64,000 nt of DNA from Octopus sinensis (taxonomy: Eukaryota), in the NCBI RefSeq assembly GCF_006345805.1, contig NC_042999.1:86304001-86368000 (forward strand), given 5' to 3'. The notes below the pieces were generated by a model. It was not told where the DNA came from. It saw only the letters and a list, made by a program, of their open reading frames with translations, and did not search any database. How positions within the stretch are numbered: the first letter of the stretch is position 1; every line of letters starts with the position of its first letter. Made by a program: the position numbers and the translations under genes. Shown here piece after piece: positions 1 through 4,430 of the stretch.

Positions 1-524
1 CATGCAGACATTGAACCCACCCGCTCCCCCCCAACAAGAAAACAAAAGAAAAAAAGAATACACACACACAAGAGATTGAAATCGATATCAGGCCGTACAT
101 TTGTACTATGACTGAACAGAAAGAAGTTAAAAGTCTAATGGAAGAGTAAATGGTATGATGTTGGTGAGACTAGGTATGCTGTGATTGAAAAGAAGAACAT
201 AGGTGACTTTATGGTGATGTGTGAATGCGAGAATTGGGAGGTGAAAGATATAAGAATGAGCGATGAATTCGTGGAAAATATGGATGAGTATTTCGGAGTA
301 AGAATGGATATGGAATTTGTTCGTATTGGCAAGGAACATTCAAGTGACTATGAAAAACAAAGGACAGGTAAGTGATGCTGACGGACGGGGCCGTTGGTAT
401 CGCTTTCATTTAATCATTTTTTCGTTTAACAATTCATGTTCATAAAGTTTAATTATAATGTTATATCCCCATGTTTCTTAGTGTCCCTTTCTGTGTCGCC
501 CCTAGTGGGTAATAAAGAAATAAG
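1..524 (+). mobile_element. ORF1-only non-LTR (Tx1/L1-like) element, copy A (3' part; truncated by window edge)
   Basis: Near-identical to the 3' parts of copies B and C (CATGCAGACATTGAACC at 1, 1750 and 3503). ORF ends at 375; tail ends ...GGGTAATAAAGAAATAAG at 524. Confidence 0.8.
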
Positions 525-536
525 AAACGTTAGCAC

Positions 537-2275
537 TTCGTTTGACGTCGGTTGTGTTTTTTTCGGCTCCTGAAAATTCGGTAAAAAAGAACAAAAGCGG
601 TGTTGTTGTTGTGGAAATTCTGAACGGCGTTGACGCGGTTTCGCGTTTCGCTCGTTCAGCGCGTTAAACTTTTTTCTGTTTTGGCGGCCGTTTTCGGTCT
701 GTCAGACAGAAGGAAATGGACTATGAGTCTCTAACAGACTTGTCCACGACAGATGAGGAACTGGAACAGGCAATTGCAGTGAAGCTGATGGAGGAAAAGG
801 CTGGAGTTTTCGAGTCTTTATCAGACTTGTCTGCGTCTGAGAAGGAGCTAGAAATGGCAGCAAGGAAATTGGAAAAGAGCTGAGTTATACTTATGCCGGT
901 GTAACCAAGAAGGCGGAAGAGAAAGGGGTCGACTTGGCCAAGCTACCAAGTTACCAGAAACACATGAAAAAGGAAAGCGGTGAGGTGGAACTATCACCGA
1001 CACCCAGGAGAAAAGAATGGTATGATAAGAGACCATTGTTTACAGGGTGTGCGCAAACGAAAGGAAGAGGGTAGAAGTTGTATCCATGGAATGGATAGAG
1101 GAAGCCCTGCGAAGAACTGAGGAGGAAATAAATTTTCTGACTCGAGGATCCAAGTACGGGACCGTAGTTGTGCATTTTAAAAGTGAATCTGCAGCGAGGA
1201 AGATGGCGCGAAGGCGGTGAAGTCGGAAAAGGTAACACTGTTACCTACGTATTTAAACAGGAGGATTACACGAATAAGGGTGGAGGGAGTGCCACCAAAC
1301 GTGGAGGCAGAATGGATTGTGGCGGCTGTGATCAGCGGCCACGAGGACGAAGTGGATATTCTCCATGCCTCGGTTAAGTCCGAGGGCTGGAGAGGCGTAA
1401 CAGTGGAGCTGAACGTACAGGCAGAGACCGAGGTACTGGTGGACCTGACGGAAAGCATCAGACTGGGAGAAGTGATCATGAGAGTGTGGGTGGAGGGCAG
1501 GGCTCCACGTTGTTACAAGTGTGGCCTGAGGGGTCACATAAGAGCCTTCTGCCCTCCCCCAGGGAAGAAATGGATCCCGAACCAGAGAGAGAGAAGCAGA
1601 AACCAGAGGAGAAGGAAACAGAGGAAGAGAATACACAGAAATGGAAGGAAGCTGGAAGTAAGAGGAAGAGAAGAATACGTGGAAAAGAAAATAATATGGA
1701 ACTCCAATCCACCCCAAAACCACCCACGCCCTCTGAGTCCCACCCTATCCATGCAGACATTGAACCCACCCGCTCCCCCCCAAAGAAAACAAAAGAAAAA
1801 AAGAATACACACACACAAGAGATTGAAATCGATATCAGGCCGTACATTTGTACTATGACTAAACAGAAAGAAGTTAAAAGTCTAATGGAAGAGTATAAAT
1901 GGTATGATGTTGGTGAGACTAGGTATGCTGTGATTGAAAAGAAGAACATAGGTGACTTTATGGTGATGTGTGAATGCGAGAATTGGGAGGTGAAAGATAT
2001 AAGAATGAGCGATGAATTCGTGGAAAATATGGATGAGTATTTCGGAGTAAGAATGGATATGGAATTTGTTCGTATTGGCAAGGAACATTCAAGTGACTAT
2101 GAAAAACAAAGGACAGGTAAGTGATGCTGACGGACGGGGCCGTTGGTATCGCTTTCATTTAATCATTTTTTCGTTTAACAATTCATGTTCATAAAGTTTA
2201 ATTATAATGTTATATGTCCCCATGTTTCTTAGTGTCCCTTTCTGTGTCGCCCCTAGTGGGTAATAAAGAAATAAG
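537..2275 (+). mobile_element. ORF1-only non-LTR element, copy B (full length)
   Basis: Starts TTCGTTTGACGTCGG directly after the 12-mer AAACGTTAGCAC (525-536). Has a ~180-bp 5' UTR, ORF1 at 716-2124 with indel frameshifts, and a ~150-bp 3' UTR. Confidence 0.8.
716..2124 (+). pseudogene. ORF1 of copy B, broken by 1-bp indels (possibly assembly errors)
   Basis: ORF track pieces 1217..1858 and 1486..2124 match the copy C protein; ATG at 716. Confidence 0.7.
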
Positions 2276-2287
2276 AAACGTTAGCAC

Positions 2288-4029
2288 TTCGTTTGACGTC
2301 GGTTGTGTTTTTTTCGGCTCCTGAAAATTCGGTAAAAAAGAACAAAAAGCGGTGTTGTTGTTGTGGAAATTCTGAACGGCGTTGACGCGGTTTCGCGTTT
2401 CGCTCGTTCAGCGCGTTAAACTTTTTTCTGTTTTGGCGGCCGTTTTCGGTCTGTCAGACAGAAGGAAATGGACTATGAGTCTCTAACAGACTTGTCCACG
2501 ACAGATGAGGAACTGGAACAGGCAATTGCAGTGAAGCTGATGGAGGAAAAGGCTGGAGATTTCGAGTCTTTATCAGACTTGTCTGCGTCTGAGAAGGAGC
2601 TAGAAATGGCAGCAAGGAAATTGGAAAAGAAGCTGAGTTATACTTATGCCGGTGTAACCAAGAAGGCGGAAGAGAAAGGGGTCGACTTGGCCAAGCTACC
2701 AAGTTACCAGAAACACATGAAAAAGGAAAGCGGTGAGGTGGAACTATCACCGACACCCAGGAGAAAAGAATGGTATGATAAGAGGACCATTGTTTACAGG
2801 GTGTGCGCAAACGAAAGGAAGAGGGTAGAAGTTGTATCCATGGAATGGATAGAGGAAGCCCTGCGAAGAACTGAGGAGGAAATAAATTTTCTGACTCGAG
2901 GATCCAAGTACGGGACCGTAGTTGTGCATTTTAAAAGTGAATCTGCAGCGAGGAAGATGGCGGCGAAGGCGGTGAAGTCGGAAAAGGTAACACTGTTACC
3001 TACGTATTTAAACAGGAGGATTACACGAATAAGGGTGGAGGGAGTGCCACCAAACGTGGAGGCAGAATGGATTGTGGCGGCTGTGATCAGCGGCCACGAG
3101 GACCAAGTGGATATTCTCCATGCCTCGGTTAAGTCCGAGGGCTGGAGAGGCGTAACAGTGGAGCTGAACGTACAGGCAGAGACCGAGGTACTGGTGGACC
3201 TGACGGAAAGCATCAGACTGGGAGAAGTGATCATGAGAGTGTGGGTGGAGGGCAGGGCTCCACGTTGTTACAAGTGTGGCCTGAGGGGTCACAATAAGCC
3301 TTCTGCCCTCCCCCAGGGAAAGAAATGGATCCCGAACCAGAGAGAGAGAAGCAGAAACCAGAGGAGAAGGAAACAGAGGAAGAGAACACAAAGGAATGAA
3401 GAAGCTGGAAGTAAGAGGAAGAGAAGAATACGTGGAAAAGAAAATAATATGGAACTCCAATCCACCCCAAAACCACCCACGCCCTCTGAGTCCCACCCTA
3501 TCCATGCAGACATTGAACCCACCCGCTCCCCCCCAACAAGAAAACAAAAGAAAAAAAAGAATACACACACACAAGAGATTGAAATCGATATCAGGCCGTA
3601 CATTTGTACTATGACTGAACAGAAAGAAGTTAAAAGTCTAATGGAAGAGTATAAATGGTATGATGTTGGTGAGACTAGGTATGCTGATTGAAAAGAAGAA
3701 CATAGGTGACTTTATGGTGATGTGTGAATGCGAGAATTGGGAGGTGAAAGATATAAGAATGAGCGATGAATTCGTGGAAAATATGGATGAGTATTTCGGA
3801 GTAAGAATGGATATGGAATTTGTTCGTATTGGCAAGGAACATTCAAGTGACTATGAAAAACAAAGGACAGGTAAGTGATGCTGACGGACGGGGCCGTTGG
3901 TATCGCTTTCATTTAATCATTTTTTCGTTTAACAATTCATGTTCATAAAGTTTAATTATAATGTTATATGTCCCCATGTTTCTTAGTGTCCCTTTCTGTG
4001 TCGCCCCTAGTGGGTAATAAAGAAATAAG
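2288..4029 (+). mobile_element. ORF1-only non-LTR element, copy C (full length)
   Basis: Same 5' start and 3' end as copy B, flanked by AAACGTTAGCAC at 2276-2287 and 4030-4041. Confidence 0.8.
2468..3878 (+). CDS. Gag-like ORF1 protein, ~470 aa when copies B and C are merged; Tx1/L1-type with CCHC zinc knuckle
   Basis: ORF track 2468..3691 (407 aa) plus 3660..3878. RITRIRVEGVPPNVEAEWIVAAV resembles the Tx1 ORF1 RRM-like segment. RAPRCYKCGLRGHIRAFCP (intact in copy B) is CX2CX4HX4C. Single-base indels differ between copies. Confidence 0.75.
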
Positions 4030-4430
4030 AAACGTTAGCACGCCGGGCGAAATGCTTAGTGGTATTTCATCTGCAGCCACGTTCTTAGTTCAAATTCCGT
4101 CGAGGTCGACTTCACCTTTTATCCTTTCGGGGTCAGTTAAATAAGTACCAGTTACGCACTGGGGTCGATATAATCGACTTAATCCGTTTGTCTGTCCTCG
4201 TTTGTCCCCTCTGTGTGTAGCCCCTTGTTGACAGTAAATAAATAGGTATTTCGTCTGCTGCTACGTTGTGAGTTCAAATTCCGCCGAGGTCGACTTTGCC
4301 TTTTATCCTTTCGGGGTCAGTTAAATAAGTACCAGTTACGCACTGGGGTCGATATAATCGACTTAATCCGTTTGTCTGTCCTTGTTTGTCCCCTCTGTGT
4401 GTAGCCCTTGTTGGCAGTAAAGAAAAAAAG
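4030..4430 (+). mobile_element. Host tRNA-derived SINE (from AAACGTTAGCAC onward) with tandemly duplicated body and tail (units 4061-4244 and 4245-4430)
   Basis: AAACGTTAGCACGCCGGGCGAAATGCTTAG matches intact SINE heads at 18144 and 52439. B-box-like GTTCAAATTCC is present. Tail is ...GTCCCCTCTGTGTGTAGCCCCTTG...TAAAGAAA. Confidence 0.85.

What the first reader, a model, noticed from the sequence alone, without database searches (positions are those of the whole stretch)
1..4070. Tandem array of an ORF1-only retroelement apparently inserted sequence-specifically into a SINE head
Seen: three head-to-tail copies of a ~1.74-kb unit with identical 5' starts, each followed by AAACGTTAGCAC (525, 2276, 4030). 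After the last copy the sequence continues GCCGGGCGAAATGCTTAG, i.e. the SINE head seen intact at 18144 and 52439 (GGCAG^AAACGTTAGCACGCCGGG). The unit encodes only a CCHC-knuckle ORF1 and no RT or endonuclease. Known: Tx1-clade LINEs include sequence-specific families (Tx1L/Tx2L, Keno on U2, Mutsu on 5S, Dewa in tRNA arrays), repeated target insertion yields TSD-separated arrays, and HAL1 elements are ORF1-only L1 derivatives. Inference: this is a HAL1-like non-autonomous Tx1 derivative whose target is the tRNA-derived head of an abundant SINE, a parasite of a parasite that I do not recognise as described.
Basis: partly seen in the sequence, partly recalled or inferred. Interest (0 to 1): 0.9.

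Follow-up and report, generated by a model that had tools for sequence, protein, structure and literature searches.

The report
Octopus ORF1-only LINE tandem array
The start of this window is a head-to-tail array of a non-autonomous octopus jumping gene that keeps only the first LINE gene; it landed in the head of a SINE here, but related copies sit elsewhere, so this is an ordinary, if neat, variant of known Tx1/L1-type behaviour.

Summary
Window 1-4041 holds one partial and two complete head-to-tail copies of a 1.74-kb unit. Each copy is followed by AAACGTTAGCAC, and the last 12-mer runs on into a SINE head.

The unit carries one 470-aa ORF when patched across frameshifts: helices, two RRM-like domains, one CCHC knuckle, a linker and a C-terminal domain. 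It has no endonuclease or RT. The ORF is homologous to ORF1 of autonomous octopod LINEs that have APE, RT and zf-RVT and whose closest solved RT is human L1 ORF2p. Unit, LINEs and one dimeric SINE subfamily share a 35-45-nt 3' tail. "HAL1-like L1/Tx1-type derivative" is therefore supported.

Obligate SINE-head specificity is not. Five other Octopus loci hold arrays or solo copies, and none lies in a SINE head. Two of these arrays have their own spacer (17 nt, 18 nt) that equals the sequence after the last copy, with different 5' truncations.

The best reading is sequential target-primed insertions sandwiching a regenerated 12-18-nt target duplication, plus unequal crossover. This is already described for Tx1-clade elements. 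One further tail-to-SINE-head junction at the same nucleotide hints at a hot spot. Interest is moderate to low.

The parts
1..524 (+). Copy A of the unit. It is the 3' 524 nt only (end of ORF1 plus the 3' UTR and tail) and is cut by the window start.
   Evidence: 98.7% identical to unit positions 1216-1742.
525..536 (+). Spacer 1, AAACGTTAGCAC. It is a copy of SINE head nt 17-28 and the presumed target-site duplication. It could be 13 nt if the preceding G belongs to the target.
537..2275 (+). Copy B, a complete unit. The 5' UTR is 537-715. ORF1 starts at 716 and is broken by frameshifts into ORFs 716-883, 1217-1858 and 1486-2124. The 3' UTR and tail are 2125-2275.
1511..1552 (+). CCHC zinc knuckle CYKCGLRGHIRAFC, intact in copy B and frameshifted in copy C near 3297.
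   Evidence: Pfam zf-CCHC, weak; profile hits to nucleocapsid and ZCCHC8 knuckles.
2114..2124 (+). The ORF1 stop codon (2122-2124) overlaps a consensus 5' splice-site-like CAG|GTAAGT.
   Evidence: O. vulgaris gene models use this site as a splice donor.
2276..2287 (+). Spacer 2, AAACGTTAGCAC.
2288..4029 (+). Copy C, a complete unit. The 5' UTR is 2288-2467. ORF1 is 2468-3878, with a 407-aa open stretch at 2468-3691 and then frameshifts. The 3' UTR and tail are 3879-4029.
   Evidence: The AF2 model of residues 1-277 has pLDDT 86.5.
3985..4029 (+). Shared LINE-type 3' tail (GTGTCCCTTTCTGTGTCGCCCCTAGTGGGTAATAAAGAAATAAG). It contains an AATAAA and a small conserved GCCC/GGGT hairpin. The same tail is at 480-524 and 2231-2275.
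   Evidence: The hairpin is conserved but shows no covariation.
4030..4425 (+). Target: a dimeric SINE lacking the first 16 nt of its head (those are expected upstream of the array). Its first 12 nt are spacer 3. Its two monomers end in LINE-type tails at about 4190-4244 and 4375-4425.
   Evidence: The same dimer junction AAATAG|GTATTTCG is present in L002 and L003.
18144..18330 (+). Uninterrupted SINE (the 'empty' version of the target: GGCAG AAACGTTAGCAC GCCGGG), from a subfamily with a different tail. A second one is at 52440-52586.

Best explanation
The region is a head-to-tail array of a non-autonomous, ORF1-only derivative of an octopod L1-superfamily LINE, most probably of the L1-Tx1 type.

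Each unit is a 5' UTR, a complete ORF1 and a 3' UTR. ORF1 has N-terminal helices, two RRM-like domains, one CCHC knuckle, a K/E-rich linker and a lineage-specific C-terminal domain. The 3' UTR ends in a 35-45-nt tail that is also carried by related autonomous LINEs and by one dimeric SINE subfamily.

Inferred steps:
- The unit makes its own ORF1 protein and borrows ORF2p (APE + RT) from an autonomous relative that recognises the shared tail.
- It integrates by target-primed reverse transcription with a 12-18-nt target-site duplication.

In this window the first insertion hit nt 16/17-28 of a SINE head, as GGCA|GAAACGTTAGCAC|GCC. Because the duplication regenerates the nick site next to a resident tail, later insertions went into the same site, so that every unit is followed by the same 12/13-mer. 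Unequal crossover between units can then change the copy number.

The SINE head is at most a favoured site (GCAGAAA... resembles the tail end GAAATA). It is not an obligatory target.
For: Anatomy:
- Searches give the array, the spacers and the ORF.

ORF1 homology and selection:
- BLASTP against ORF1 of an autonomous LINE (L002 14832-20040) gives 2e-28, and against a second ORF1-only element gives 9e-37.
- 281 representative proteins match at E <= 1e-3. The ten looked up by name comprise seven octopod proteins (Octopus vulgaris, O. bimaculoides, O. sinensis and Argonauta hians) plus three unnamed ENA/Logan entries.
- The AF2 model has pLDDT 86.5 and Foldseek matches tandem-RRM proteins.
- dN/dS is 0.23-0.46 between four of the five lineage pairs compared (0.77 against an L001 array unit), so ORF1 was under selection.

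No ORF2 and a shared tail:
- The window has no APE or RT.
- The related autonomous LINE-A has Exo_endo_phos + RVT_1 + zf-RVT, and its best solved relative is human L1 ORF2p at 1.8e-37.
- Unit, LINE-A and SINE share the tail.
- O. vulgaris has 13 recently active L1-Tx1 families, and L1-Tx1 is the only L1-type group listed (PMC13282606).

Sequential insertion:
- L002 has three copies truncated at unit positions 1230, 1416 and 4. Each is followed by GAAATCTACCCACGTGT, which is also the sequence after the last copy.
- L005 has copies starting at unit positions 1596 and 11, each followed by GTACAATATGGTTTGTGC.
- Solo SINEs with this tail have 13-14-nt duplications.

Mosaic arrays:
- The L001 and L003 arrays are mosaics of two tail variants, which suggests input from more than one source element.

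Precedent and later expansion:
- Kojima 2015 describes tandem Tx1-partner insertions 'sandwiching a TSD' (PMC4494074).
- Crossover is supported by a 3-unit higher-order repeat in L001, where units 2 and 5 are 100% identical.
Against: - The 5' edge of the array is outside the window, so the predicted GGCGGCGAGCTGGCA + spacer + unit junction was not seen.
- Units B and C have identical full-length 5' ends and identical spacers. Simple duplication of one insertion would predict the same.
- In L005 and L002 the leftmost copy is not preceded by the spacer. That gives n units and n spacers, whereas plain repeated insertion predicts n+1.
- Why the same site should be hit repeatedly in a 2.8-Gb genome at three unrelated target sequences is not explained by endonuclease specificity alone.
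- The L001 and L003 arrays have little or no spacer.
- No autonomous element with a near-identical ORF1 was found. LINE-A ORF1 is only about 35% identical.
Confidence: 0.6

Rival explanations
1. One insertion followed by local tandem duplication. A single unit inserted into the SINE head with a 12/13-nt target duplication. Slippage or unequal exchange between the two duplicated 12-mers, and then between units, produced the array. No further retrotransposition into this site took place.
For: - B and C have the same full-length 5' end and the same spacer, and they are 99.5% identical.
- L001 shows a clear 3-unit higher-order repeat (u2=u5 100%, u3=u6 99.9%, u4=u7 99.8%), so recombination does act on these arrays.
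Against: - The L002 and L005 arrays have the same design but with copies 5'-truncated at different points directly next to the spacer. Duplication cannot produce this without several precise deletions.
- L001 and L003 are mosaics of two tail variants.
- 12 bp is very short for unequal exchange.
Confidence: 0.2
2. Read-through RNA plus template jumping or self-homing. Transcripts of a resident copy end at the poly(A) cleavage site, 20-24 nt after the tail's AATAAA, and so carry the first 12-18 nt of local flank. Such RNAs are concatenated by end-to-end RT template jumps, or they pair with their own 3' junction and prime reverse transcription there. Either route gives modules of [unit + flank].
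For: - The spacer ends fall 20, 23 and 24 nt after AATAAA in the window, L002 and L005.
- Every unit is followed by a spacer, but the first unit is not preceded by one in L002 or L005.
- There are many spacer-less head-to-tail junctions between different elements of this LINE group, with intact 5' ends. Examples are AAAACAAC|ATTAAGGGAGACCC (twice) and tail|ACATGGAGGAAAGC in both L001 and L003.
Against: - No poly(A) tracts occur at any junction.
- The spacer sizes equal the ordinary target duplications of pol III SINE partners, 13-14 nt.
- No direct evidence on RNA 3' ends is available.
Confidence: 0.12
3. One reading: an obligately sequence-specific Tx1 derivative whose endonuclease partner targets nt 16-28 of the SINE head.
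For: - The array sits exactly in a SINE head and in the same orientation as the SINE.
- A second independent junction of a tail-bearing element with a SINE starting at the same nucleotide exists: AAATAA|GAATCGTTTGCACG at L002 minus strand, about 30028.
- Target specificity is common in the Tx1 clade (PMC4494074).
Against: - About 20 SINE heads in 190 kb are uninterrupted.
- None of the unit copies at L001-L005 is in a SINE head, and their flanks are unrelated.
- Solo SINEs with the same tail have unrelated target duplications.
- At L002 about 30028 there is no half SINE head upstream of the inserted SINE, although homologous 5' joining could hide one.
Confidence: 0.07

Closest known systems
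HAL1 ('half-L1') elements of mammals (Smit 1999; Bao & Jurka 2010; summarised in PMC5753468)
   Same: A non-autonomous LINE derivative that keeps a selected, intact ORF1 and the LINE ends, has lost ORF2 and depends on ORF2p in trans. Such derivatives arose more than once: a second ORF1-only lineage is at L002 10426-12330.
   Different: It derives from an octopod L1/Tx1-type lineage and not from mammalian L1. ORF1 is of the RRM-RRM-CCHC type, not coiled-coil-RRM-CTD. The 3' end is a specific tail without poly(A). It forms tandem arrays.
Tx1-clade target-preferring LINEs and their SINEs (Tx1L in Tx1D; Tx1-Mar and SINEU-3 in Mariner-N4_AMi; Keno, Mutsu, Dewa, Kibi, Koshi) - Kojima & Fujiwara 2004; Kojima 2015 (PMC4494074)
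   Same: An APE-type L1-superfamily LINE group with a SINE partner sharing the tail. Insertion into another transposon. Tandem copies sandwiching a constant 12-18-nt target duplication.
   Different: Here the sandwiches occur at three unrelated target sequences, so strict target specificity is not shown. The arrayed element is an ORF1-only derivative. Clade assignment rests on domain content and on elimination, not on a tree.
HeT-A of Drosophila telomeres
   Same: A gag/ORF1-only non-LTR element that needs RT in trans and builds head-to-tail arrays.
   Different: HeT-A belongs to the Jockey clade and extends chromosome ends without endonuclease nicks or target duplications. The octopus arrays lie tens of megabases inside chromosomes (L001-L005 coordinates).
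L1-mediated chimeric retrocopies and R2 end-to-end template jumping (Buzdin 2002; Bibillo & Eickbush)
   Same: An intact 3' end of an upstream element is joined directly to the full or truncated 5' end of a downstream element, as at many junctions in L002, L001 and L003.
   Different: Template jumping does not by itself explain the 12-18-nt spacers that match the local flank.

Membership tests
ORF1-only non-autonomous LINE derivative (HAL1-like) | Encodes a protein homologous to ORF1 of autonomous LINEs | tested here: met
   BLASTP gives 2e-28 to ORF1 of the L002 14832-16223 LINE and 9e-37 to L002 10554-12035. tblastn shows 35% identity to LINE-A ORF1.
ORF1-only non-autonomous LINE derivative (HAL1-like) | Lacks the endonuclease and reverse transcriptase | tested here: met
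   tblastn with APE, RT and C-terminal queries found no hit in the window. Pfam found only a weak zf-CCHC. The unit is 1.74 kb, of which 1.41 kb is ORF1.
ORF1-only non-autonomous LINE derivative (HAL1-like) | Shares its 3' end with an autonomous LINE that could mobilise it | tested here: met
   About 35 nt (..TCTGTGTnGCCCCTnGTGGGTAATAA..) are shared with LINE-A (L002 minus strand 5978-1010) and with a SINE subfamily. Mobilisation itself was not tested.
ORF1-only non-autonomous LINE derivative (HAL1-like) | Amplified by retrotransposition: dispersed copies, 5' truncation, target duplications, ORF under selection | tested here: met
   Copies lie on five other chromosomes or loci in two species. 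They include a solo 87% copy (L004) and truncated copies (L002, L005). dN/dS is 0.23-0.46 in four of the five comparisons and 0.77 against an L001 array unit.
Tx1 clade of non-LTR retrotransposons | RT domain groups with Tx1 references in a phylogeny | not testable with these tools
   No Tx1 or L1 reference set is available. The indirect evidence is that the closest solved RT is human L1 ORF2p (1.8e-37 against 2e-24 for R2), and that L1-Tx1 is the only L1-type group among recently active O. vulgaris LINEs (PMC13282606).
Tx1 clade of non-LTR retrotransposons | ORF2 with an APE endonuclease, RT and a C-terminal zinc-binding motif (L1-superfamily layout) | tested here: met
   Pfam finds Exo_endo_phos, RVT_1 and zf-RVT in LINE-A. 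These are in the autonomous relative, not in the unit itself.
Sequence-specific LINE targeting the SINE head | Most copies lie at one target sequence with a constant duplication | tested here: not met
   None of five other loci is in a SINE head. Their spacers and flanks are GAAATCTACCCACGTGT, GTACAATATGGTTTGTGC, CACATG and none. The sample is small and partly from another species or subfamily.
Sequence-specific LINE targeting the SINE head | Independent insertions recur at the same nucleotide of the target | tested here: inconclusive
   One further case exists, at L002 minus strand about 30028: a dimeric SINE tail abuts GAATCGTTTGCACG. That makes two of about 20 analysable tail junctions.
L1-type ORF1p (coiled coil - RRM - CTD) | Sequence or fold similarity to solved L1 ORF1p | tested here: not met
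   phmmer and profile searches of PDB hit only CCHC knuckles. The Foldseek top hits are generic tandem-RRM proteins (Sxl, UP1, HuR), not L1 ORF1p. The architecture fits the RRM + CCHC class of LINE ORF1 proteins instead.
tRNA-derived SINE (target element) | Head detectably related to a tRNA | tested here: not met
   ARAGORN found no tRNA in the window. Rfam found no tRNA hit at gathering thresholds or at E <= 1 on 18130-18340. Only a B-box-like GAGTTCAAATTCC is visible by eye.

The most novel reading that the evidence does not exclude
Elements of this octopod L1/Tx1-type group, and above all the ORF1-only derivative, home to the 3' junction of resident copies. They would do so by recognising tail-plus-regenerated-target, or because their RNAs carry 12-18 nt of local flank that base-pairs with the nicked site. 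Each locus would then seed its own growing, satellite-like array at an arbitrary genomic position. This would be a retrotransposition-driven route to tandem DNA that does not need a sequence-specific endonuclease.
Probability: 0.25. Interest if true: 0.6.

Novelty: new member of a known kind. Interest (0 to 1): 0.35.

Why it matters
The finding adds a clean invertebrate example of an ORF1-only ('half-LINE') parasite of an L1/Tx1-type LINE. It shows that LINE, half-LINE and SINE share one 3' tail in octopus, where SINEs and LINEs make up about a quarter of the genome.

The arrays with locus-specific spacers are a useful natural data set on how target-primed reverse transcription re-uses a site, and on how retroelements seed tandem repeats.

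There is also a practical consequence. The arrays and the splice-donor-like end of ORF1 already produce spurious or chimeric gene models in the O. vulgaris annotation.

Tried and rejected
- Pfam and PDB sequence searches of the 470-aa ORF and of a 21-sequence profile returned only CCHC knuckle hits and no named ORF1 family.
- Word-indexed homologue searches returned only six Octopus gene models. The exhaustive HMMER search was needed to see the family.
- The AF2 model of the C-terminal domain had pLDDT 54, too poor for a fold search. BLASTP of that domain against the C-termini of LINE-A and 'unit2' ORF1 was not significant, so I do not claim it is homologous to theirs.
- I could not fetch DNA upstream of the window. 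Exact look-ups of three window ORFs found nothing, and the rest of the window has no usable ORF. P0003 returned no DNA.
- Two metagenome scans for the tail + SINE-head junction gave 0 hits.
- ARAGORN and Rfam found no tRNA or other RNA family.
- Rejected: that the 12-mer is the unit's own 5' end. Other subfamilies start ACGTGTTTGAG... or CATTTGG... without it.
- Rejected: that the 184-bp SINE tandem at 4061-4425 is another same-site reinsertion. The same dimer junction occurs in L002 and L003, so it is a family-level dimeric SINE.
- Rejected: that LINE-A is the direct parent. Its ORF1 is about 35% identical and its 5' end is different.
- The tail hairpin is conserved but shows no compensatory changes, so no structural claim is made.

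
Full report
1. OBSERVATION

Window 1-4041 contains three head-to-tail copies of one unit.
- Copy A is 1-524, its 3' part only, cut by the window edge.
- Copy B is 537-2275 and copy C is 2288-4029.

Each copy ends in ...GGGTAATAAAGAAATAAG and is followed by AAACGTTAGCAC at 525, 2276 and 4030. 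B and C start identically with TTCGTTTGACGTCGG.

The 12-mer, allowing one mismatch, occurs 7 times in the window against 0.29 expected. The other exact copies, at 18160 and 52456, lie inside intact SINE heads that read GGCAG AAACGTTAGCAC GCCGGGCGAAATGC.

After the last unit the sequence continues GCCGGGCGAAATGCTTAG..., so the third 12-mer is contiguous with a SINE that lacks only its first 16 nt.

B and C differ mostly by 1-2-bp indels and are 99.5% identical in substitutions. Only the left edge of the array is out of reach.

2. WHAT THE UNIT ENCODES

No single copy has an intact frame. Patching B and C across four small indels gives one ORF of 470 aa that fills 1.41 of the 1.74 kb.

- Pfam and PDB sequence searches recognise only the CCHC knuckle CYKCGLRGHIRAFC.
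- An exhaustive HMMER search finds 281 representative relatives.
- The ten looked up by name comprise seven octopod proteins (Octopus vulgaris, O. bimaculoides, O. sinensis, Argonauta hians) plus three unnamed ENA/Logan entries.
- An AlphaFold model of residues 1-277, built on 30 of these, has pLDDT 86.5. It shows N-terminal helices followed by two beta-alpha-beta domains and the knuckle.
- Foldseek matches tandem-RRM proteins such as Sxl, hnRNP A1 UP1 and HuR at probability 1.0. It does not match L1 ORF1p.

The protein is therefore an RRM-RRM-CCHC nucleic-acid-binding protein of the kind that many LINEs encode as ORF1. It is not the mammalian L1 type.

The last 100 residues form a lineage-specific domain.
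- It is 60% identical in a 74%-diverged relative of the unit.
- It is not detectably similar to the C-termini of more distant ORF1s.
- It could not be modelled (pLDDT 54).

dN/dS between the window ORF and copies at other loci is 0.23-0.46 in four of the five comparisons and 0.77 against an L001 array unit. The ORF was therefore under purifying selection while the family spread.

3. RELATIVES AND THE LIKELY SOURCE OF RT

The only named homologues were O. vulgaris and O. sinensis gene models. Fetching their loci gave 127 kb of Octopus DNA, L001-L005.

L002 carries two autonomous LINEs.
- LINE-B is on the plus strand at 14832 to about 20040.
- LINE-A is on the minus strand at 5978 to about 1010. 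It has ORF1 (438 aa), APE and RT.

The unit's ORF1 aligns to the ORF1 of these LINEs: E = 2e-28 to LINE-B and 35% identity to LINE-A.

LINE-A ORF2 has Exo_endo_phos, RVT_1 and zf-RVT. Its closest solved RT is human L1 ORF2p at 1.8e-37, against 2e-24 for R2.

A recent O. vulgaris repeat annotation lists RTE, Dong-R4, CR1, L1-Tx1, Hero and R2 as the recently active LINE groups (PMC13282606). Only L1-Tx1 fits this domain layout. 'Tx1-type' is therefore a reasonable inference, but I could not run the defining RT phylogeny.

The last 35-45 nt of the unit are shared with LINE-A and with one SINE subfamily, the dimeric SINE that the array sits in. This is the classical LINE/SINE tail relationship (Kajikawa & Okada 2002, as cited in PMC4494074). 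A 4-bp hairpin is conserved there but shows no covariation.

L002 also holds a second, unrelated-in-sequence ORF1-only element at 10426-12330 (ORF1 493 aa, E = 9e-37). Loss of ORF2 has therefore happened more than once in this group, as with mammalian HAL1 (PMC5753468).

I did not find an autonomous element with a near-identical ORF1.

4. IS THE SINE HEAD A SPECIFIC TARGET?

No other locus supports an obligatory target.
- L001 (O. vulgaris chromosome record OX597821.1) has at least 9 tandem units.
- L003 (OX597827.1) has about 9 tandem units.
- L002 (OX597839.1) has five copies, L004 one solo 87% copy and L005 (O. sinensis) two copies.
- None of these is in a SINE head, and none carries the 12-mer.
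- About 20 SINE heads in the 190 kb examined are uninterrupted.

Two arrays, however, repeat the window's design with other sequences.
- In L002, three copies truncated at unit positions 1230, 1416 and 4 are each followed by GAAATCTACCCACGTGT. That 17-mer is also what follows the last copy.
- In L005, a copy starting at position 1596 and one starting at position 11 are each followed by GTACAATATGGTTTGTGC.

Different 5' truncations next to an identical spacer are the signature of separate target-primed reverse-transcription events at one regenerated site. They are not the signature of duplication.

Solo SINEs with the same tail have 13-14-nt target duplications, so the spacers of 12/13, 17 and 18 nt are of the right size.

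Exactly this pattern, 'tandem insertions sandwiching a TSD' produced by sequential insertion, has been described for Tx1-clade partners. So has a preference for another transposon as target (PMC4494074).

One more junction, at L002 minus strand about 30028, joins a dimeric-SINE tail to an older SINE that starts at the same head nucleotide: AAATAA|GAATCGTTTGCACG. Two hits on one nucleotide in the same orientation are unlikely by chance. They suggest that GCA|GAAAC..., which resembles the tail end GAAATA, is a favoured nick site. In a genome that is 11.6% SINE, such a site would be hit often.

5. OTHER FORCES ON THE ARRAYS

L001 contains a 3-unit higher-order repeat: units 2/5, 3/6 and 4/7 are 99.8-100% identical, against 97-99% for other pairs. 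Unequal crossover therefore also expands arrays.

L001 and L003 are mosaics of two tail variants, which suggests input from more than one source element.

Many junctions in L001-L003 join an intact tail directly to the 5' end of another element of the same LINE group with no spacer. This fits insertion right after resident tails or RT template jumping.

Two points remain unexplained by plain repeated insertion.
- The leftmost copy in L002 and L005 is not preceded by the spacer.
- The spacers end 20-24 nt after the tail's AATAAA, the usual distance of a poly(A) cleavage site.

These points keep alive a model in which RNAs carry a short local flank and home to, or are concatenated at, their own locus.

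6. VERDICT

The thing is real. It is best described as a tandem array of an ORF1-only, trans-dependent L1/Tx1-type retroelement of octopods. It was built by repeated insertion into a regenerated 12/13-nt target, which here happens to lie in a SINE head, with later recombination.

The claim of SINE-head sequence specificity, and the claim that the arrangement is undescribed, do not.

Novelty: a new member of known kinds (half-LINE; Tx1-type TSD sandwiches). Interest is 0.35.

The most novel reading still open is self-homing of the family to the 3' junctions of its own copies, as a general array-building mechanism. I give that a probability of about 0.25.

Noticed in passing
window 4030-4425; also L002 30446-30030 (minus strand) and L003 22800-22394 (minus strand): The 184-bp 'tandem' found by TRF is a family-level dimeric SINE. 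The second monomer always starts at GTATTTCGTCTGC, directly after the first monomer's LINE-type tail (AAATAG|GTATTTCG), at three independent loci.
   Followed up: partly
window 18144-18330 and 52440-52586, compared with 4030-4425, 5560-5759 and 14815-14983 (minus strand): There are two SINE subfamilies with the same head and body but different 3' tails. One ends ...GGCCTTGTGCCTATAATAGAAA. The other carries the L1/Tx1-type tail ...GCCCCTTGTGGGTAATAAAGAAATAG. This implies two different LINE partners.
   Followed up: partly
window 2114-2124 and 3868-3878; proteins P0001-P0005: The ORF1 stop overlaps a consensus 5' splice site, CAG|GTAAGT. O. vulgaris gene models use it. They chain the C-terminal domains of three consecutive array units (P0001, P0002) or fuse the domain to host exons (P0003 cilia-protein-like, P0005 HAUS1, P0004 an APE fragment). 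These are either annotation artefacts or real exonisation.
   Followed up: no
L002 10426-12330 (plus strand): A second ORF1-only element of a different lineage: ORF1 of 493 aa, 37% identical to the unit's, with a LINE-A-type tail ...GGGTAATAATAAAACAAC. It lies directly downstream of the unit copies.
   Followed up: partly
L002 1-13064, both strands; L001 20836-23724; L003 15652 onwards: Elements of this LINE group lie in head-to-tail chains with intact tails abutting the 5' ends of the next element. The L001 and L003 arrays are both followed by the same other element, which starts ACATGGAGGAAAGC. L002 7813-7818 is a head-to-head junction of two unit fragments at the microhomology CCACCC.
   Followed up: partly
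L001 6977-17337: A three-unit higher-order repeat lies inside the array: units 2-3-4 are repeated as units 5-6-7 at 99.8-100% identity.
   Followed up: yes
window 58040-58150: An 18-nt inverted repeat (GTCACTGTTATTTATGAC ... GTCATAAATAACAGTGAC) encloses a short telomere-like tract (TTAGGG variants).
   Followed up: no
window 25187-32402: A dense block of long (AT)n, (TATA)n and (TATC)n microsatellites, up to about 580 bp each.
   Followed up: no
window 1-4029: The copies differ almost only by 1-2-bp indels that break the frame at different places in each copy. This pattern is compatible with long-read consensus errors as well as with real decay.
   Followed up: no
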